A DNA stretch of 63,332 bases, the filler included, from Octopus bimaculoides (taxonomy: Eukaryota): the NCBI RefSeq assembly GCF_001194135.2. It is 5 parts of 5 records of this genome, joined end to end, with 100 filler letters (N's around TTAATTAATTAA, not from the genome) between each part and the next. Parts side by side here need not be neighbours in the genome. Positions count along the whole stretch, not along the records: positions 1 to 28,374 come from NC_069010.1; 4 more parts are not named here. The stretch is one strand, 5' to 3'. The first letter of the stretch is position 1. Every line of letters begins with the position of its first letter. This document shows positions 3,176 through 17,446 of the stretch, piece by piece. The position numbers were made by a program, and so were the translations under genes. The notes beneath the pieces were generated by a model. That model searched no databases, was not told the DNA's origin, and was given only the letters and a program-made list of their open reading frames with translations.

Positions 3176-3325
3176 GCATATACGCCAATAGTAAAACAAG
3201 GTACTCAGGTCAATACAATACATTTAACTTAGAACACCTTTGCAGACACTATCCCAGTGGAGCCACAGTCCAAAGATGACTAAAACTGATAAAAAAAACA
3301 AAAAAACAAAAATCAATTATGAAAT

Positions 3326-3720
3326 AGGCGCAGGAGTGGCTGTGTGGTAAGTAGCTTGCTTACCAACCACATGGTTCCGGGTTCAGTCCCACTGTGTGGC
3401 ACCTTGGGCAAGTGTCTTCTACTATAGCCTCGGGCCGACCAAAGCCTTGTGAGTGGATTTGGTAGACGGAAACTGAAAGAAGCCCGTCGTATATATGTAT
3501 ATATGTATGTGTGTATATGTTGTGTATCTGTGTTTGTCCTCCCAACATCGCTTGACAACCGATGCTGGTGTGTTTAGGTCCCTTGTAACTTAGCGGTTCG
3601 GCAAAAAGAGACCGGTAGAATAAGTACTAGGCTTACAAAGAATAAGTCCTGGGGTCGATTTGATTCGACTAAAGGCGGTGCTCCAGCATGGCCGCAGTCA
3701 AATGACTGAAACAAGTAAAA
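3326..3720 (+). mobile_element. SINE family A, near full length
   Basis: A/B-box-like head, internal (TA/TG)n, tail AAATGACTGAAACAAGTAAAAG. Nearly identical to the copies at 16725 and 17520. Confidence 0.9.
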
Positions 3721-5430: not shown

Positions 5431-6420
5431 TTTCTTTATTGCCCACAAGGGGGCTAAACATAGAGGGGACAAACAAGGACAGACAAAGGGATTAAGTCGA
5501 TTACATCGACCGCAGTGCGCAACTGGTACTTAATTTATCGACCCCGAAAGGATGAAAGCCAAAGTTGACCTCGGCAGAATTTGAACTCAGAACGTAAAGA
5601 CAGACGAAATACCTATTTCTTTACTGCCCACAAGGGGCTACACACAGAGGGGACAAACAAGGACAGTCAAACGGATTAAGTCGATTATATCGACCCCAGT
5701 GCGTAACTGGTACTTAATTTATCGACCTCGAAAGGATGAAAGCCAAAGTTNNNNNNNNNNNNNNNNNNNNNNNNNNNNNNNNNNNNNNNNNNNNNNNNNN
5801 NNNNNNNNNNNNNNNNNNTTATCTTATTTCTTTATTGCCCACAAGGGGGCTAAACATAGAGGGGACAAACAAGGACAGACAAAGGGATTAAGTCGATTAC
5901 ATCGACCGCAGTGCGCAACTGGTACTTAATTTATCGACCCCGAAAGGATGAAAGCCAAAGTTGACCTCGGCAGAATTTGAACTCAGAACGTAAAGACAGA
6001 CGAAATACCTATTTCTTTACTGCCCACAAGGGGCTACACACAGAGGGGACAAACAAGGACAGTCAAACGGATTAAGTCGATTATATCGACCCCAGTGCGT
6101 AACTGGTACTTAATTTATCGACCTCGAAAGGATGAAAGCCAAAGTTGACCTCGGCAGAATTTGAACCCTGAACGTAAAGACAGATGAAATACCTATTTCT
6201 TTACTGCCCACAAGGGGCTACACACAGAGGGGACAAACAAGGACAGACAAACGGATTAAGTCGATTATATCGACCTCAGTGCGTAACTGGTACTTAATTT
6301 ATCGACCCCGAAAGGATGAAAGGCAAAGTCGACCTCGGCGGAATTTGAACTCAGAACGCAGTGGCAGACGAAATACCGCTACGCATTTCGCCCGGTGTGC
6401 TAACGTTTCTGCCAGCTCGA
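5431..6420 (-). repeat. Tandem array of ~180-bp SINE family C bodies with one head at ~6360-6420
   Basis: The unit ATTTCTTTAYTGCCCACAAGGGG...GAAATACCT recurs at 5431, ~5615, ~5826, ~6011 and ~6194. 5820-6140 duplicates 5424-5750 across the gap. Confidence 0.9.
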
Positions 6421-7342: not shown

Positions 7343-9303
7343 NNNNNNNNNNNNNNNNNNNNNNNNNNNNNNNNNNNNNNNNNNNNNNNNNNNNNNNNNN
7401 NNNNNNNNNNNNNNNNNNNNNNNNNNNNNNNNNNNNNNNNNNNNNNNNNNNNNNNNNNNNNNNNNNNNNNNNNNNNNNNNNNNNNNNNNNNNNNNNNNNN
7501 NNNNNNNNNNNNNNNNNNNNNNNNNNNNNNNNNNNNNNNNNNNNNNNNNNNNNNNNNNNNNNNNNNNNNNNNNNNNNNNNNNNNNNNNNNNNNNNNNNNN
7601 NNNNNNNNNNNNNNNNNNNNNNNNNNNNNNATGTGATTAAATATGCATTCCATTTGACAGAGTAATCTAAATGCTTTAAGGCTAATCATAGATCTTCTGG
7701 ATCAGGACTAGACAGAACCGTGTGAATATCAGAGCAAAAATGTGTCAACAGCCAAGGCTGAGAACATTCTCATATCATTAACATTAAGTCGTTAATAACT
7801 TATTAGCAAGCATTAACTTCCGCGTTCTTGGCACAAGGCCAGCAAGTTCAATTAGACTGACAACCCCAGGGCTCAACTGGTACTTATTTTTTTGACCTTC
7901 AAAAGGATGAAAGGCAAAGTCAACCTCAGTGGAATTTGAACTCAGAACACAAAGATAGATGAAATGCTGCTTAGCTAACTGTCAGATCATGTGATTTACC
8001 TCTGACTTGGGCCCACTGGCAGTGACATAACACCTATAGCAGATGATACCCGTCTGTCAACAATATAAGTACATGTGCTTTTATGCACCACGAGTCCTTA
8101 TAAGAAGTTTTCTCAAGGTAAATAATGCAGTACTCTGTGTTCTAACACAACATCCATGTTAAGTTGTAAATATATATGTATGTATGTTGTTGTTGTTGGC
8201 ACTCTGTCGCTTATGACGTCGAGGATTCCAGTTGATCCGATCAACGGAACAGCCTNNNNNNNNNNAAGGCTGTTCTGTTGATCGGATCAACTGGAACCCT
8301 CGACGTCGTAAGCGAACGGAGTGCCAACATGCCAACATTCTACCTGTTATATATTCAAACCAGACAGGTCTGGCTTCCCGCAACTACCCAGCTATTTAAT
8401 GCTAATAATAAGCAACTACATTATCAAAATCTCAAAGCAATGAGAAAATGCATGATTAATTCAAAACAATGTGATTAAATATGCATTCCATTTGACAGAG
8501 TAATCTAAATGCTTTAAGGCTAATCATAGATCTTCTGGATCAGGACTAGACAGAACCGTGTGAATATCAGAGCAAAAATGTGTCAACAGCCAAGGCTGAG
8601 AACATTCTCATATCATTAACATTAAGTCGTTAATAACTTATTAGCAAGCATTAACTTCCGCGTTCTTGGCACAAGGCCAGCAAGTTCAATTAGACTGACA
8701 ACCCCAGGGCTCAACTGGTACTTATTTNNNNNNNNNNNNNNNNNNNNNNNNNNNNNNNNNNNNNNNNNNNNNNNNNNNNNNNNNNNNNNNNNNNNNNNNN
8801 NNNNNNNNNNNNNNNNNNNNNNNNNNNNNNNNNNNNNNNNNNNNNNNNNNNNNNNNNNNNNNNNNNNNNNNNNNNNNNNNNNNNNNNNNNNNNNNNNNNN
8901 NNNNNNNNNNNNNNNNNNNNNNNNNNNNNNNNNNNNNNNNNNNNNNNNNNNNNNNNNNNNNNNNNNNNNNNNNNNNNNNNNNNNNNNNNNNNNNNNNNNN
9001 NNNNNNNNNNNNNNNNNNNNNNNNNNNNNNNNNNNNNNNNNNNNNNNNNNNNNNNNNNNNNNNNNNNNNNNNNNNNNNNNNNNNNNNNNNNNNNNNNNNN
9101 NNNNNNNNNNNNNNNNNNNNNNNNNNNNNNNNNNNNNNNNNNNNNNNNNNNNNNNNNNNNNNNNNNNNNNNNNNNNNNNNNNNNNNNNNNNNNNNNNNNN
9201 NNNNNNNNNNNNNNNNNNNNNNNNNNNNNNNNNNNNNNNNNNNNNNNNNNNNNNNNNNNNNNNNNNNNNNNNNNNNNNNNNNNNNNNNNNNNNNNNNNNN
9301 NNN

Positions 9304-11727: not shown

Positions 11728-11863
11728 TGTAAACTGCTTTAAAGTTGTAGTTGTTCATTTCTTCAGCTTTGATAATGATCCTCACAATGGCAAGTTCAAA
11801 TACCACCGTTTTCCCTGCTCCTGTTGGGGCACATACCACAATGGAATTATCAGTATACAAAGC
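11728..11863 (-). CDS. HFM1: HFM1 exon with Walker A (ALYTDNSIVVCAPTGAGKTVVFELAIVRII...KAVY)
   Basis: tttcag| acceptor, A|gtaagt donor. APTGxGKTVVFELAI is characteristic of Ski2-like HFM1/Mer3 helicases. Confidence 0.97.
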
Positions 11864-12114
11864 CTGAAATAGAATGAAGTTTCATACATGATGTCACCCA
11901 ATAAAATATTCTTTTCTACTCTAGACACAAGGCCTGACATTTTTGGGGGAGGAGGGCCAGTCGATTAGATCGACCCCCAGTATGCAACTGGTACTCAATT
12001 TATTGACCCTGAAAGGATGAAAGGCAAAGTTGACCTCGATGGAATATGAACTCAGAACATAAAGACAGACGAAAATTGCTGACCTTGTGCCAAAATTTGA
12101 AAAGATCATTATTG

Positions 12115-13147
12115 ATCATTAAAGCAGCGAGGTGTAAAGATGGACATGGGCTGATTAGCAGACAGGAGTGCATCAACGGTGAAAGCAAAAATATGGCAGA
12201 ATATTTGGTAAACAGCAAAGAAGATCTGCTAAAGTATGCTGCTAATGCAGAAGAATTTACCAGCAATAGAGTTGAGAGTGCTAATGAATTCTGATCACGA
12301 ATAGCCAACGAGAGAAAATAAACTGTACTCCACATGAAATTACATGGTCTGTTCCACCGTGAAACTAACATATTAAAAGACCAGGAAGCATCCTGGAGGT
12401 GACCTAAAAAAAGAAGACTGAAAACCTAATCATCGCTGCCCAGGACCAGGCATTGAATACTAACTCAGCGAAAAAGGATATATATATACCACACAAGTGC
12501 AACGGACCTCTGCAGAATGTGTGGGAAGAGGGTCGAAAGCGTAACTCACATTGTTAGTGCTTGTGAAAGTTTTGTGCAGAAAGAGTACAAGCACAGACAC
12601 AACAAGGTAGCCCAAAACCTTCACAGGAGTACCGGAAAAGATAATGGATGAAAAGGGGAAGGCAAAAATCCTCTGAGACTTTGACTTCCAAACAGACAAG
12701 GTGTTAGAGCACCAAAGGCCGGATGTAGTAGGAGGGACAATCAAGAGTGTCTAATAATCGATGTAGCAGTGCCAGGGGACCAACATATTATCATCAAAGA
12801 AAGAGAAAAGATTGATAAATATGGAGACCTGAGATATGGGATTGTCAAGATGTGGCAGCTATGAGAGTTAAACTTAAAGGTTGTCCCTGTTGTCATTGGA
12901 GCTTTGGGTTCAATACCACCCAACCTGAAGAAACACCTGGAAACTTTAGAAATACCCTACAATTTAGGTGCATTGCAAAAATCGGCATTACTTGGAACTG
13001 CATGGATATTGCATAAAGTACTGGTCTGTCTGAGGTCCTTGTTGTGACTTGACAGACATTACAAACCCCCAGTAGACACAATACCTTCAATCAGCAACAT
13101 CACAATATTGGATACTGAGCATCTTAAATAATAATAATAATAATAAT
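12115..13147 (+). mobile_element. R4/Dong-clade non-LTR retrotransposon 3' fragment with restriction-like endonuclease and (TAA)n tail
   Basis: CRMCGKRVESVTHIVSAC zinc knuckle, RH, RPD, IIDVAVP, EKIDKY and VVIGALG motifs with frameshifts. Ends in aataataataat. Confidence 0.85.
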
Positions 13148-13157
13148 GTAAACTCAC

Positions 13158-13225
13158 GTCATCAACAATTTTCGATTGTGTTGAATTGAAGTATTCGAAA
13201 GGGAATATGTCTCTAAATTTGGATG
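13158..13225 (-). CDS. HFM1: HFM1 exon, Q-motif region (P-SKFRDIFPFEYFNSTQSKIVDD)
   Basis: Matches recalled HFM1 PAKFRSIFKEFPYFNYIQSKAFDD. Donor |gtgagt, phase 1 to phase 0. Confidence 0.92.
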
Positions 13226-13836
13226 CTGGAATTTGAACCAGCTAAGGAAAACATCATCATCACCACCACCATCTTCGTATAATGGTGTAATTTCTCATGC
13301 TGAATACAATTTACTTTCAATATTTTTGACAAGATTTTGTATTTTAGAAGTTATTTCGTGTTAAAGTTTGCTTTTTTTATTTGCTTTTCGAGTGCCTCTT
13401 TGTACATTTGCCTTTTCACCACCCGTACAAAGAGGCGATCAAAAAGCAAAAAAAAAAAGTGTGTAATATGCAACACAGGTAGTAAATAAAGATAAAATAG
13501 AACAGAGTGGTGACATTTAGTAGAGATGACCCAAAAGTTGTTGCTCTTCGATAACTATTGCATACAGGAGTGGATTTCTTCAGCTGAATACACATCGTTG
13601 GTTGGTTAAAATTACCTAAATATGGCAACTTTAACAAAAAAATAACTTCTAAATTACAAATTCTAGTCAAAAATGTTGAAAGCAAACCGTGTTCAGTGTG
13701 AGAAATTACACCAGTATATGAAGTTTCAAACTGTTTAGTTAAAAAAAAAAAAAAAGCAATTAAAAAATCTGTTACTGAAACTGAAGGGATCCCAACAATA
13801 TCAACAACAACAGCAACAACATAGTAGAAAGGATAC
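13226..13836 (-). other. HFM1: U12-type (minor spliceosome) GT-AG intron of HFM1, 611 nt, phase 1
   Basis: 5' splice site GTATCCTTTC is a perfect match to RTATCCTTT. Branch box TTTTCCTTAGC (13251-13241) has its A at -18. No polypyrimidine tract before the CAG. Confidence 0.88.
13273..13723. mobile_element. Inverted-repeat element (MITE-like) inside the U12 intron
   Basis: 13273-13371 is an imperfect reverse complement of 13624-13723. Related sequence at about 18930-19200, 22600-22800 and 56400-56650. Confidence 0.75.
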
Positions 13837-13896
13837 GTATTTCCATCACAGATTTCAGCATATTCAACTTGGGAAGAGGAACAGAAGATGTTGGCA
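13837..13896 (-). CDS. HFM1: HFM1 exon (V-PTSSVPLPKLNMLKSVMEI-P)
   Basis: Acceptor ctgtctttacag|. LKSVMEIP matches recalled human HFM1 LKAVTEIP. Donor is the U12-type GTATCCTTT. Confidence 0.9.
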
Positions 13897-14457
13897 CTGT
13901 AAAGACAGAGAGAGAGGGTTCAATACCAGCAAAAGCTGTAGTAACAACTTACACTACAAACATGGCGGTAAGAAACTCCCAAGGGAGCTGGACAGCAGAG
14001 GGGCTTCAGAAAAGAACCCCACCTCAACTCGGGCAAGTGTCTTAACCCTTAACTTCTTACACTTTAACCGGGGCCAGGCCACATCAAGGTATTGACTCTT
14101 GTATGCCCTTCTGCTGACATTTTTTAACCACTTGGATATTTGTGAATTTGATAAGACCAAATCATGTCATCTACTGGAGTGTCGACCATTTTGAAAGGAG
14201 AGGGCAAGTTGATTACATCAATCCCCAGTGCTCAACTGGTATTTATTTCATCAACCCTGACCAGTCAGCCACACCAAATTGTCAGCAGTGAAAACAGCAG
14301 CACCCTATTGTCCCTTTCCATCCTTTCTCTACCAAAGGAAGGTGGTACATCGTACTAAATACCACCAGGCACTTTGTCCAATGAGCTAGCACTACTACCA
14401 ACCCAACCAAAGAATAAATTAGAATGAAGAATATCCAAAACTGAAAGAATTATTTAC

Positions 14458-14783
14458 CTTCTTGCTCAAACACGGGGTCTTCATGTGGTGCTAATGATAA
14501 TCCCAAACTGACATCTTTGAAAATATCAAGTGCACCACCACCACCAATACCACCACCACCACCACCACCTCCACATTCACGGCCACTGTCATCATCATTA
14601 TCATCAATAACAATTGTAACACCATCAGTAAAAGTAGTAGCAGTAGCATTAGTGTTGGTGGTTGTGTTGTAGTCTTGTGTTGACAACAGGCTTTCAGTCT
14701 TGTCATGGAATAATCCACCAACCGTCTCCTGAGATTTAAAAGGATTAACAAATATCTTTCGACGAGGGACTGTTTTGAATTGT
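14458..14783 (-). CDS. HFM1: HFM1 exon, low-complexity N-terminal linker (QFKTVPRRKIF...GGGGGGGGIGGGG...VFEQE)
   Basis: Acceptor tatttcag|, donor G|gtaaat, 326 nt open, phases match both neighbours. Confidence 0.8.
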
Positions 14784-14899
14784 CTGAAATATTTGAGATG
14801 TAAATTAGACAGCATGTAGTAAAGACAATCACATACACTCACACACACATACATACATACACTTAGATAGACATACACAGACATTTACATAATGAATGT

Positions 14900-14930
<31 letters not shown>

Positions 14931-15582
14931 TGAAAGACACATATATACTCATGTACAAAATGTGTTGTTGTTGTTGTTGTCATTATTGTTGTATAACATG
15001 TCCTCTATTATCTTGTACATAATGAACGCGCAAACATGTTGATGGGGGGCAGTTTATCTCATCCCCCTCCAACTTTTAGTTGATGCAATTGAAATAACTG
15101 CATTATTTATGGGATGACTCAATATATATATATGTATGTATGTGTGTTTCTTTGTGTCAGTGTTTGTCCCCCACCACTGATTGACAACTGGTGATGGTGT
15201 GTTTACGTCCCCGTAATCTAGCAGTCCAGCAAAAACGACCGATAGAATAAATACCATGCTTCAAAACAAGTACTGGAGTCGATTAGTTCAACTAAAATCC
15301 CTCAAGGCAGTGCCCCAGCATGGCTGCAGTCTAATGACAAACAAGTAAAAGATTAAAAAGAATGCCCATATATACTAATACACATGCATACACAAACACA
15401 CAAATGCATACATAACCACACACATATACAAACTTACATGTGCACAAATACACACATATACTAATACACAAAGACACTTACATACACAAATCTACACATA
15501 CACATGCACTCACACACACACACACTGCTACATATGCCCTATTTAACAAGAGGAAGAAATATGGAGTTGGAAGTTTACTTAC

Positions 15583-15607
15583 ATCTCATCTTTCTTTGAT
15601 GCAACAT
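15583..15607 (-). CDS. HFM1: HFM1 25-nt microexon (D-VASKKDE-I)
   Basis: cttacttttgtag| acceptor and |gtaagt donor. It supplies exactly the phase 1 to phase 2 shift needed to join the 17190 exon to the 14783 exon. Confidence 0.75.
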
Positions 15608-15654
15608 CTACAAAAGTAAGATTGGTTTATTTAATTAATCAGGATGAAATTAAT

Positions 15655-16440
15655 GAATTAGCAACAACAAAACAATAGTAACTAGCAAGACACATAAGAT
15701 AATATAGTCCTAGATACACTATGTCTGAATAAAAGAGAGGATGGTCATAGCTGGAGCACCTTTGGACATAGGTCTGCTGGATCAGGACTGACCTGGGGCT
15801 AAACAACCACAACAAGGAAGGACACATTAGATAATGTAGTCCTAGATACACAATGCCTGAATAAAAGAGGGGATGGTCATAGGTCTGCTGGATCAGAAAT
15901 TACTTGGTGCCAAACAACAGCAACGATGAAAGACTCATTAGATAATGTAGTCCGAGATACATTATGCCTGAATGAAAGATGGGATGGTCACAAGTGGAAC
16001 GCATTTGATCATAGAGTTGTTGAAACAAGACTAATCTGGGGCTAAACAAGGACGGACACATTAGACAATGTAATCTTAGATACACAGTGCCTGAATAAAA
16101 GACAGGATGGTTATAGGTCTGTTGGATTAGAAATTACTTGCTGCTAAACAACAACAAGAACAAAAATCACATTAAATAATGTAGTCCTAGATACATTATG
16201 TCTGAATAAAAGATGGGATGGTCACGAGTGGAACACATTTTATCATAGTTATCTAAGTTGAAGAATGATCTAGTACAAAATAGCAGCAACAAGGAAAGAC
16301 ATTAAATAATGTAGTCCTAGATACATTATGTCGGAATAAAAGGCATGATGGTCACAGCTGGAACACCTTTAATCATAGGTCTGTTGCTTGAGGACTGATC
16401 TAGTACAATATAGTAGCAATGTGGACGGACTCATTGGATG
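15655..16440 (+). repeat. Diverged tandem array of 110-130-bp units ending in (AAC)n
   Basis: The core GTCCTAGATACA...GAATAAAAG...GGATGGTCA recurs 6 times plus a partial unit. An opposite-strand array of about 3 units is at 26320-26680. Confidence 0.85.
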
Positions 16441-16724
16441 CATTATCTCAAATTTGGTAGACAGAAACTAGAAGAAGCCTGTCGTACATGTGTGTATGTG
16501 TGTCTAACTTTGCCCCCCCCCCCGCCACCACTGTTTAACAGTGTTGGTTTGTTTACATCTCCACCAACAAAGCACTTTGGCAAAAGAGACTGATAGAAAA
16601 AGTACCAGGCTTAAATGAAAAAATAAGTACTGGAGTCAATTCATTCAACTGAAAAATTCTTCAAGGTGGTACCCCAGCATGGCCACAGTCTAAAGACAGA
16701 AACAAATAAATGATAAAAGAATAT

Positions 16725-17165
16725 AAGGAGTGGCTGTGTGGTAAGTAGCTTGCTTACCAACCACATGGTTCCGGGTTCAGTCCCACTGCGTGGCACCTTG
16801 GGCAAGTGTCTTCTACTATAGCAACGGGCCGACCAAAGCCTTGTGAGTGGATTTGGTAGACGGAAACTGAAAGAAGCCCGTCGTATATATGTATATATAT
16901 GCATATGTATGTGTGTATGTGTTTGTGTGTCTGTGTTTGTGTGTATGTGTTTGTGTGTATGTGTTTGTGTGTCTGTGTTTGTCCCCCCAACATCGCTTGA
17001 CAACCGATGGTGGTGTGTTTATGTCCCCATAACTTAGCGGTTCGGCAAAAGACACCGATAGAATAAGTACTAGGCTTGTAAAGAATAAGTCCTGGGGCTC
17101 GATTTGCTCGACTAAAGGCGGTGCTCCAGCATGGCCGCAGTCAAATGACTGGAACAAGTAAAAGA
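16725..17165 (+). mobile_element. SINE family A, full length
   Basis: Head to tail intact; lies within about 25 bp of the 17190 donor. Confidence 0.9.
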
Positions 17166-17189
17166 GTATATATATATATATATATTTAC

Positions 17190-17446
17190 CACGAGGCATT
17201 TTCGGCTGATAACGCTGGGAATCTTTAGCTTGGGTAGTCTTATTAGTAGATTTAACTTGGCTCTTTTTAAATTGAGGTTTCTTAACTCGGGTATTTTTAA
17301 TCTGGCTCAACGATGGTAAGGACATCTGAGAGATTTTAAAATTAAAGTCTTCGTTGTTCACAGAATCCAACTTGAACAGGTCATCGATGGATGGTGCAAC
17401 TGGAATCGTGCTTCGCTTCCCTGCATCTTTTGCTGAGAATTCACAC
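17190..17446 (-). CDS. HFM1: HFM1 exon, N-terminal region (CEFSAKDAGKRSTIPVAPSIDDLF...QPKMPR)
   Basis: Acceptor ttttaag|, donor G|gtaaat, 257 nt open in phase 2 to phase 1. IPVAP resembles the LPPAP motif I recall near the vertebrate HFM1 N-terminus. Confidence 0.8.

What the first reader, a model, noticed from the sequence alone, without database searches (positions are those of the whole stretch)
13226..13836. U12-type minor-spliceosome intron in the meiotic helicase HFM1
Seen: donor GTATCCTTTC, branch box TTTTCCTTAGCT with A at -18, no polypyrimidine tract, GT-AG termini, phase 1 within the conserved EIP codons just before the helicase Q-motif. All other introns here have U2-type donors. 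Established: RTATCCTTT and TCCTTAAC are the U11 and U12 recognition consensus sequences; such introns are rare, often slowly spliced and enriched in DNA-metabolism genes. The branch box deviates (TTAGC for TTAAC) and creates an extra AG 16 nt upstream of the true acceptor, whose use would frameshift. Inference: minor-spliceosome activity could be rate-limiting for HFM1, and hence crossover control, in the germ line. I cannot tell whether this intron is already catalogued.
Basis: partly seen in the sequence, partly recalled or inferred. Interest (0 to 1): 0.8.

Follow-up and report, generated by a model that had tools for sequence, protein, structure and literature searches.

The report
Conserved minor-spliceosome intron in HFM1
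This is a real U12-type (minor-spliceosome) intron in the meiotic helicase gene HFM1, but it is the counterpart of an intron already catalogued in human and mouse and already tested in mouse testis, so it is a sound but ordinary finding.

Summary
On the minus strand, 13836..13226 is a 611-nt GT-AG intron of an HFM1/Mer3 gene. It has donor GTATCCTTTC, branch box TTTTCCTTAGCT (A at -18) and phase 1 in the Pro codon of E-I-P, just before the Q motif. Three RNA assemblies from two studies join 13837 to 13225 exactly.

I scored it with matrices built from 77 catalogued human minor introns. The donor is the best of 48,776 12-mers in the window and the branch box is second best. Six other HFM1 introns here score -12.7 to -18.7 bits, which is U2-type.

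The same position and phase carries a U12-type intron in a fish, a turtle and a tephritid fly. It is U2-type in a butterfly and a fungus, and absent in a leech. Human and mouse HFM1 are listed as minor-intron genes with donor TTC/TCC|GTATCCTTT (Olthof 2019). Mouse Hfm1 is mis-spliced after U11 loss in testis (NAR 2026).

The TTAGC box is not a defect. Known minor introns (HMBS, MCTS1, CFAP44) have it, and related species keep it. The internal AG contains the branch A, and no contig uses it.

A rate-limiting role in this species is untested; one short contig hints at late removal. Low interest.

The parts
13837..13896 (-). HFM1 exon upstream of the intron. It encodes ...PTSSVPLPKLNMLKSVMEI plus the first base (C) of the Pro codon.
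   Evidence: Translation. RNA contig pieces end exactly at 13837.
13226..13836 (-). U12-type GT-AG intron, 611 nt, phase 1.
   Evidence: Joint 13225/13837 in RNA contigs of X25, X43 and X46. PWM scores are +14.4 bits for the donor and +12.0 bits for the branch box.
13827..13836 (-). U12-type 5' splice site GTATCCTTTC (the U11 and U6atac pairing site).
   Evidence: with its three exon bases (TACGTATCCTTT) it is the best of 48,776 12-mers in the window. No difference is listed in this box in related organisms B, C and E.
13240..13251 (-). U12-type branch box TTTTCCTTAGCT. The presumed branch adenosine is at 13243, 17 nt before the last intron base.
   Evidence: The core TCCTTAGC is kept in related organisms B and C; only 13240 differs (T>C on the minus strand). 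The same TTAGC variant occurs in known human and mouse minor introns.
13242..13243 (-). It is made of the branch A and the following G.
   Evidence: Sequence. No contig joins 13837 to 13241 in any run laid.
13226..13227 (-). The 3' splice site AG, the first AG downstream of the branch box.
13158..13225 (-). HFM1 exon downstream of the intron: (P)SKFRDIFPFEYFNSTQSKIVDD, which carries the Q motif.
   Evidence: The only difference seen in relatives is synonymous (13197, TTC>TTT).
13273..13723 (.). Foldback (MITE-like) repeat that fills most of the intron. Its arms are 116 nt long and 78% complementary.
   Evidence: inverted repeat. (depth of 10^3 to 10^5 in DNA contigs of related species, so a high-copy family). 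(RNA fold -190 kcal/mol, z = -19).
11864..13157 (-). Next HFM1 intron, U2-type (GTGAGT...TTTCAG).
   Evidence: Joint seen in RNA contigs. U12 donor score -14.8 bits.
11728..11863 (-). HFM1 exon with helicase motif I (ALYTDNSIVVCAPTGAGKTVVFELAIVR...).
14458..14783 (-). Upstream HFM1 exon. It is followed by a U2-type donor, GTAAAT.
   Evidence: RNA contig pieces. Donor score -15.6 bits.

Best explanation
Window 13836..13226 (minus strand) is the ancient, conserved U12-type intron of the meiotic crossover helicase gene HFM1/Mer3. It is orthologous to the single minor intron catalogued in human and mouse HFM1.

The following mechanism is inferred from the established model of minor splicing. The pre-formed U11/U12 di-snRNP binds the donor GTATCCTTT through U11. 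It binds the branch box UUCCUUAGC through U12, with A13243 bulged as the branch point and the following G forming a G-U wobble where the consensus has A-U. U4atac/U6atac.U5 then joins and U6atac replaces U11 at the donor. The first AG at a permissible distance downstream (13227-13226, 17 nt away) is used as acceptor. This joins ...MEI-P-SKFRDIF... in frame.

What is shown here: the motifs, the exact junction in RNA, and the shared position and phase with U12-type introns in fish, turtle and a fly.

What is not shown here: that the minor snRNPs do the splicing in this organism, and that this step limits HFM1 output.
For: **Gene identity.** The best matches are HFM1 at 50-54% identity.

**Junction.** RNA contigs join 13225 to 13837 in X25 (4,219-nt contig) and in X43 and X46.

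**Motif scores.** The matrices were built from 77 human minor introns in Olthof 2019 Table S2.
- The donor scores 14.4 bits, above 60% of the mouse minor introns in the same table, and is the best 12-mer in the window.
- The branch box scores 12.0 bits, above 68% of those mouse introns, and is second best in the window.
- The six other HFM1 introns score -12.7 to -18.7 bits at the donor. The best branch score, measured for four of them, is -3.7 to +1.3 bits.

**Orthologues at the same codon and phase.**
- Danionella: TTC|GTATCCTCT, branch box TATACCTTGACA.
- Platysternon: TCC|GTATCCTTT.
- Rhagoletis: TAC|GTATCCTTT, branch box GTTTTCTTAACA.
- Human and mouse HFM1 minor-intron donors TTC|GTATCCTTT and TCC|GTATCCTTT fit the codons I + C of E-I-P.

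**Conservation and function.** No difference is listed in the donor box or the TCCTTAGC core in related species. Mouse Hfm1 is mis-spliced and its protein reduced when Rnu11 is deleted in the germ line (PMC12956336).
Against: - No experiment here shows dependence on the minor spliceosome.
- The organism's minor snRNA genes could not be examined. There are none in the window, and the organism's name is coded.
- The branch point is inferred from the motif, not mapped.
- The branch-to-acceptor spacing of 17 nt is, from my recollection of the literature and not checked here, longer than the optimum of about 11-13 nt.
- The equivalence with the human and mouse intron rests on the three exon bases before the donor and on the turtle and fish loci. 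It was not checked against the human or mouse genome sequence itself.
Confidence: 0.92

Rival explanations
1. One reading: removal of this U12 intron is slow and rate-limiting, so minor-spliceosome activity sets the HFM1 level, and hence crossover control, in the germ line of this animal.
For: - One RNA contig (X26 record 7, 153 nt, depth 3.8) has the downstream U2 intron already removed (11862 joined to 13157). It still runs 34 nt into the 3' end of the U12 intron (13226-13259). That order of removal fits late U12 splicing.
- In mouse, loss of U11 mis-splices Hfm1 and lowers the transcript and the protein (PMC12956336).
- The intron has stayed U12-type in vertebrates, in this lineage and even in a dipteran. 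Diptera have lost most minor introns (PMC10639083).
Against: - The retention evidence is a single short, low-depth contig, and assembled contigs are not quantitative.
- The three longer contigs are fully spliced.
- The intron was converted to U2-type in a butterfly and lost in a leech, with no sign that HFM1 was lost. The U12 state is therefore dispensable.
- A pan-eukaryotic survey argues that neutral processes explain much of minor-intron retention (PMC10639083).
- The mouse result shows that minor splicing is necessary. It does not show that normal variation in minor-spliceosome activity tunes HFM1.
Confidence: 0.25
2. The intron is removed by the major (U2-type) spliceosome in spite of its U12-like motifs. 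It would then be a 'minor-like' or hybrid intron in the sense of Olthof 2024.
For: - The termini are GT-AG, which both spliceosomes accept.
- The region before the acceptor is 68% pyrimidine.
- The same intron position is U2-type in Leptosia and Basidiobolus, so conversion is possible.
Against: - The donor matches the U1 consensus CAGGTAAGT at only 4 of 9 positions, against 6-7 of 9 for four of the neighbouring introns.
- Both U12 motifs score in the upper half of known minor introns.
- The pyrimidines before the acceptor are mostly the branch box itself.
- No difference is listed in the donor box or the branch-box core in related species.
Confidence: 0.04
3. The motif coincidence is chance, or an artefact of assembly or annotation, and there is no real intron with these ends.
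For: - RTATCCTTT occurs twice in the window against 0.65 expected, so the 9-mer alone is not rare.
- The window has eleven runs of N.
Against: - Three RNA assemblies use exactly these ends.
- The joined reading frame is conserved HFM1 sequence.
- There is no N run inside 13150-13900.
- DNA contigs of related species carry the same splice-site sequences.
Confidence: 0.01

Closest known systems
The minor (U12-type) intron of human HFM1 and mouse Hfm1, listed in the Minor Intron Database work (Olthof et al. 2019, BMC Genomics, Table S2; human chr1:91380983-91385186, ENST00000370425)
   Same: - Same gene family and the same GT-AG subtype.
- Same donor core GTATCCTTT.
- The three exon bases before the donor fit Ile + C of the E-I-P codons (human TTC, mouse TCC, here TAC).
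- The branch box departs from the consensus in all three.
- The turtle locus, read directly, has the mouse 12-mer TCCGTATCCTTT at the E-I-P codon.
   Different: - The branch box here is TTTTCCTTAGCT and scores higher on my matrix (12.0 bits) than the human or mouse box ..CTCCTTAATG (9.6 and 8.5 bits).
- The intron is much shorter: 611 nt against 4.2 kb in human and 6.3 kb in mouse.
- Most of its body is a lineage-specific foldback repeat.
- I did not read the human or mouse genomic sequence itself.
Mouse germ-line Rnu11 knockout study (Nucleic Acids Res. 2026, PMC12956336)
   Same: It finds exon skipping and intron retention in Hfm1, reduced signal by in situ hybridisation, and reduced protein.
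   Different: It is a mammal. The paper reports that minor-intron status of spermatogenesis genes is conserved mainly in chordates. Here the HFM1 minor intron is also present in this non-vertebrate genome and in a tephritid fly.
Known minor introns with a TCCTTAGC-type branch box: HMBS, MCTS1, Arl2, CFAP44, Tmem231 (Olthof 2019, Table S2)
   Same: They carry the same departure from TCCTTAAC, with G at the position after the first A. Human CFAP44 has TTTTCCTTAGCA, one base different from the box here, and scores 85.9 of 100 on the authors' scale.
   Different: They are unrelated genes. They show only that the variant is tolerated by the minor spliceosome.
Converted or lost orthologues of this same intron: Leptosia nina (U2-like), Basidiobolus ranarum (U2-type), Helobdella robusta (no intron)
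   Same: Leptosia and Basidiobolus have an intron at the identical codon position and phase.
   Different: - Their donors are GTATTTTAG and GTAAGTTGA, and neither has a U12 branch box. Scores are -5.6 and -13.8 bits at the donor.
- In Leptosia the base before the donor has become G, as expected after conversion to U2-type.
- In the leech the region is one uninterrupted reading frame.

Membership tests
U12-type (minor-spliceosome) intron | Extended, rigid 5' splice site /RTATCCTT directly at the exon-intron boundary | tested here: met
   TAC|GTATCCTTT scores 14.4 bits on a matrix built from 77 human minor introns. It is above 60% of the mouse minor introns in the same table and is the best of 48,776 12-mers in the window.
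U12-type (minor-spliceosome) intron | Branch box TTCCTTRAY close to the 3' end. intronIC searches -55 to -5 and requires A at position 9 or 10 of the 12-mer. | tested here: met
   TTTTCCTTAGCT scores 12.0 bits and has A at position 9, with 17 nt to the last intron base. The criterion is taken from PMC7367187. The TTAGC variant is present in known minor introns.
U12-type (minor-spliceosome) intron | No polypyrimidine tract between the branch site and the acceptor | tested here: inconclusive
   Between the box and the AG, 9 of 17 bases are pyrimidines (GCTGGTTCAAATTCCAG). Positions -25..-4 are 68% pyrimidine because of the box itself. The neighbouring U2 introns are 59-64%, so this feature does not discriminate in this gene.
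U12-type (minor-spliceosome) intron | The stated ends are really used in RNA | tested here: met
   Joint 13225/13837 in contigs of X25, X43 and X46.
U12-type (minor-spliceosome) intron | Splicing depends on the U11, U12, U4atac and U6atac snRNPs | not testable with these tools
   This needs an experiment. For the mouse orthologue it is shown by Rnu11 ablation (PMC12956336).
U12-type (minor-spliceosome) intron | The organism possesses the minor spliceosome | not testable with these tools
   Only this window is available and it holds no Rfam family. The organism's name is coded. The literature reports many minor introns in molluscs and most animals, but I could not establish the taxon of this window.
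Orthologue of the catalogued HFM1 minor intron | Same position and phase in the aligned coding sequence as the vertebrate minor intron | tested here: met
   Phase 1 in the Pro codon of E-I-P here, in Danionella and in Platysternon, all with GTATCCT donors. The human and mouse 12-mers agree with this codon context. The human and mouse genomic sequence itself was not read.
HFM1/Mer3 (Ski2-like meiotic DNA helicase) | Helicase core with Q motif, motif I (APTGxGKT), Ia, Ib and II (DEIH/DEVH), and closest relatives named HFM1 | tested here: met
   The exon concatenate reads ...FNSTQSK...APTGAGKT...MAPIKAL...TTPEKWD...LFMIDEIH...AVSAT. The best matches are 'Helicase for meiosis 1' / HFM1/MER3, with PF00270 and PF04851.
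HFM1/Mer3 (Ski2-like meiotic DNA helicase) | C-terminal winged-helix and Sec63 domains, and meiosis-specific expression | not tested
   The 3' part of the gene lies outside the window, and the tissue of the RNA runs is coded. Only a minority of the RNA runs examined hold the exons, which fits restricted expression but does not show it.

The most novel reading that the evidence does not exclude
The HFM1 minor intron is not a chordate speciality. It is a U12 intron at least as old as bilaterians, at a position that already held an intron in the ancestor of animals and fungi. It has been kept as U12-type in vertebrates, in this invertebrate lineage and even in a dipteran, a group that has shed most minor introns. 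If that retention is selected rather than neutral, coupling of minor-spliceosome activity to the level of the crossover helicase would be an ancient feature of animal meiosis. The mouse Rnu11 phenotype would then generalise well beyond chordates.
Probability: 0.2. Interest if true: 0.45.

Novelty: already known. Interest (0 to 1): 0.18.

Why it matters
HFM1/Mer3 stabilises crossover intermediates in meiosis, and human HFM1 variants cause ovarian insufficiency. A step that limits its expression therefore matters for fertility.

That the gene carries a minor intron, and that minor-spliceosome loss damages its expression in the mouse germ line, is already published. What this window adds is small:

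- It is a clean non-vertebrate instance, with RNA support.
- Together with a tephritid fly, it shows that the intron's U12 state predates the split of protostomes and deuterostomes.
- It is a useful positive control for U12 annotation in a repeat-rich genome.

It opens no new question.

Tried and rejected
**Searches that gave nothing**
- I laid RNA runs X24 and X28 (raw reads, 2026; about 6% of each run read) and X39, X40, X30, X31. Coverage of the two HFM1 exons flanking the intron was negligible in X24 and X28 and absent in the other four. Junction use, retention and cryptic-AG use could not be quantified.
The downstream exons therefore rest on translation and homology.
- Rfam found nothing in the window at gathering threshold.
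- The supplements of the two papers that would list non-chordate orthologue classes are not held as text (PMC12956336 and PMC11347168). I could not look up whether this species' intron is catalogued.

**Organism identity**
- It could not be established. Run and organism names are coded.
- The protein search returned no close relative with a name; the best match was 54% identity, to chicken.
- I ran no further search on this, because the fly locus already settled the evolutionary depth.

**Ideas considered and rejected**
- That TTAGC is a weakening mutation or an assembly error. It recurs in known minor introns and is fixed in two related species.
- That the AG in the branch box is a usable cryptic acceptor. 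It includes the only A of the box, and no contig uses it.
- That the second ATATCCTTT (12481-12473, minus strand, inside the next intron) marks another minor intron. Chance expectation is 0.65 per window, and the HFM1 contig that crosses the region (X25 record 1) splices straight from 13157 to 11862.

Full report
**What is at the coordinates.**
The gene lies on the minus strand. Read that way, the stretch is ...ATG CTG AAA TCT GTG ATG GAA ATA C | GTATCCTTTCTACT ... GATGATGTTTTCCTTAGCTGGTTCAAATTCCAG | CA TCC AAA TTT AGA GAC ATA TTC CCT TTC GAA TAC TTC AAT TCA ACA CAA TCG AAA ATT GTT GAT GAC | GTGAGT.
- The donor G is at 13836 and the acceptor AG at 13227-13226, so the intron is 611 nt.
- The box TTTTCCTTAGCT occupies 13251-13240. 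Its only A is at 13243, which is 18 nt before the first exon base.
- The AG formed by that A and the next G lies 16 nt upstream of the true acceptor.
- The joined reading frame is ...KLNMLKSVMEI-P-SKFRDIFPFEYFNSTQSKIVDD. The intron is phase 1 in the Pro codon, just before the Q motif.

**The gene.**
I joined this exon pair with the next four open exons: 11863-11728, 10663-10512, 9744-9664 and 5293-5129. This gives 222 residues carrying the Q motif, APTGAGKT, MAPIKAL, TTPEKWD, LFMIDEIH and AVSAT.
- Its best matches are proteins named 'Helicase for meiosis 1' or HFM1/MER3, at 50-54% identity over more than 90% of the query, with DEAD and ResIII domains.
- RNA contigs add two upstream exons, 14783-14458 and 17448-17190.
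- The window holds only the 5' part of the gene. It is broken by eleven runs of N and many repeats.

**The intron is real.**
- A 4,219-nt RNA contig in run X25 aligns to 11728-11862, 13157-13225 and 13837-13898 in consecutive contig positions.
- Two runs of a different study, X43 and X46, each have a contig with the joint 13225 to 13837, 'skips 611, ends CT..AC' on the plus strand. That is GT..AG on the gene strand.
- No contig in any run joins 13837 to 13241, which is the join the internal AG would give.

**Is it U12-type?**
Olthof et al. 2019 (PMC6717393) give, in Table S2, the 12-nt donor and branch sequences of the human and mouse minor introns. From the first 77 human rows I built log-odds matrices against the window's base composition.
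- Known minor introns have a median donor score of 14.1 bits. Their median branch score is 11.7 bits in human and 11.1 bits in mouse.
- The donor here, TACGTATCCTTT, scores 14.4 bits. It is the best of 48,776 12-mers on both strands of the window.
- The box TTTTCCTTAGCT scores 12.0 bits and is the second best.
- The six other HFM1 introns in the window score -12.7 to -18.7 bits at the donor. For four of them the best branch score was also measured, at -3.7 to +1.3 bits.
- The donor matches the U1 consensus at only 4 of 9 positions.
- The 9-mer RTATCCTTT alone is not rare: 2 found against 0.65 expected. What is beyond chance is that the best donor and the second-best branch box sit at the two ends of an RNA-proven intron, 17 nt from its AG.
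- The one criterion that does not discriminate here is the missing polypyrimidine tract.

**The 'deviant' branch box.**
- The same table shows TCCTTAGC-type boxes in accepted minor introns: Hmbs/HMBS, Mcts1/MCTS1, Arl2, CFAP44 (TTTTCCTTAGCA, one base from the box here) and Tmem231.
- By inference from the known U12 pairing, the G can wobble-pair with the U that normally pairs with the second A. That leaves A13243 bulged as the branch point.
- DNA contigs of two related species (coded B and C) keep TCCTTAGC. They differ only at 13240, just past the core, and at one synonymous exon position.
- No difference is listed in the donor box in B, C and E.
- The internal AG contains the branch A itself, so it is too close to be an acceptor. 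The true AG is the first one downstream.

**Comparison across species.**
I fetched the loci of HFM1 proteins returned by the search and read the same codon.

| Species | Group | State at the E-I-P codon | Donor context | Branch box | U12 donor score |
|---|---|---|---|---|---|
| Danionella cerebrum | fish | U12-type | GAA ATT C\|GTATCCTCT | TATACCTTGACA, 14 nt from the AG | 12.8 bits |
| Platysternon megacephalum | turtle | U12-type donor | GAA ATC C\|GTATCCTTT | ACATTCTTAACT, weaker and more distant (27 nt) | 15.4 bits |
| Rhagoletis zephyria | tephritid fly | U12-type, 80-nt intron | GAT ATA C\|GTATCCTTT | GTTTTCTTAACA | 14.4 bits |
| Leptosia nina | butterfly | U2-like, same position and phase | GAA ATA G\|GTATTTTAG | none | -5.6 bits |
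| Basidiobolus ranarum | fungus | ordinary U2-type, same position and phase | GTAAGT... | none (CTAAT-type branch) | -13.8 bits |
| Helobdella robusta | leech | no intron | - | - | - |

So the intron position predates the split of animals and fungi. The U12 state predates the split of protostomes and deuterostomes. Conversion and loss have both happened since.

**What is already known.**
- Olthof 2019 lists one minor intron in HFM1. In human it is chr1:91380983-91385186, donor TTCGTATCCTTT, box GACTCCTTAATG. In mouse the donor is TCCGTATCCTTT and the box AACTCCTTAATG.
- The three exon bases before those donors are what the codons Ile + C of E-I-P give. The turtle 12-mer that I read at that codon is identical to the mouse one.
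- A 2026 study deleted the U11 gene in the mouse germ line. It found Hfm1 exon skipping and intron retention, lower signal by in situ hybridisation and lower protein, and it discusses Hfm1 as a contributor to the meiotic arrest (PMC12956336).
- Larue and Roy 2023 surveyed over 3,000 genomes. They note minor-intron richness in molluscs and massive loss in Diptera.

The class call and the functional idea are therefore both in the literature. Whether this species' copy sits in a database could not be checked, because the relevant supplements are not held.

**Is it rate-limiting here?**
The only hint is one 153-nt, low-depth contig in X26. It has the downstream U2 intron removed, yet runs 34 nt into the 3' end of the U12 intron. 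This fits late removal of the U12 intron, but it is a single assembled fragment.

The raw-read RNA runs available barely cover the gene. Loss and conversion of the intron in other animals show that the U12 state is not indispensable. I rate the regulatory reading at about one in four.

**Verdict.**
- The branch-box 'defect' and the cryptic AG do not hold up as concerns.
- The finding is the orthologue of a catalogued and functionally studied intron.
- The modest additions are the RNA-supported non-vertebrate instance, and the survival of the U12 state in a fly.

Noticed in passing
window 13273-13723 (inside the intron): Most of the intron body is a foldback, MITE-like repeat with arms 13273-13388 and 13608-13723 (116 nt, 78% complementary) and a nested 35-nt hairpin (13371-13459). 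DNA contigs of four related species pile up on it at depths of 10^3 to 10^5, so it is a high-copy family. As RNA the intron folds to -190 kcal/mol (z = -19). That would draw the donor and the branch box close together. Whether it affects U11/U12 recognition is unknown.
   Followed up: partly
window 11813-11862 + 13157-13259 (contig 7 of run X26): One RNA contig has the downstream U2 intron spliced out but continues 34 nt into the 3' end of the U12 intron. This is an order-of-removal hint that the U12 intron is taken out later.
   Followed up: partly
L005 3001-3125 (Rhagoletis zephyria HFM1): A tephritid fly keeps an 80-nt U12-type intron (TAC|GTATCCTTT ... GTTTTCTTAACA ... CAG) at the same codon. 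Diptera are reported to have lost nearly all minor introns.
   Followed up: partly
L006 about 3290-3362 (Leptosia nina) and L004 2191-2253 (Basidiobolus ranarum): Both have an intron at the same position and phase, but of U2 type. In the butterfly the donor is GTATTTTAG and the preceding base has become G (Pro codon replaced by Asp), which looks like a U12-to-U2 conversion. In the leech Helobdella (L001 5001-5543) the region has no intron.
   Followed up: partly
window 12473-12481, minus strand: A second perfect U12-like donor motif, TATATATCCTTT (13.8 bits, AT-type), lies inside the next HFM1 intron. No exon is seen there, and 0.65 such motifs are expected by chance in the window.
   Followed up: partly
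window 11966-12123, also 14838-14963 and 16728-17231: Short interspersed repeats inside HFM1 introns reach contig depths of 10^4 to 10^5 in RNA runs. They belong to abundantly transcribed repeat families, and many reads run off into unrelated sequence.
   Followed up: no
window 13795-13822 and 13252-13270 (minus strand), and 13125-13148: Trinucleotide microsatellites sit directly inside both ends of the intron: GTT/GCT repeats 14 nt after the donor, and GGT/GAT repeats ending at the branch box. An (ATT)n run lies just after the next donor. In related species the conserved flank stops at these repeats (13818 and about 13269).
   Followed up: no
window 5751-5818, 7343-7630, 8256-8265, 8728-9303, and seven more beyond 18000: There are eleven runs of N (assembly gaps or masking). 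Four lie in the 4.4-kb intron between exons 9744-9664 and 5293-5129, so that intron's length and content are uncertain. The very low GC values at 18-20 kb and 22-24 kb in the composition profile coincide with N runs.
   Followed up: no
window 14784-17189: RNA contigs that join exon 17448-17190 to exon 14783-14458 carry 25 extra bases between the two pieces that were not placed. This may be a micro-exon in this interval or an alignment gap.
   Followed up: no
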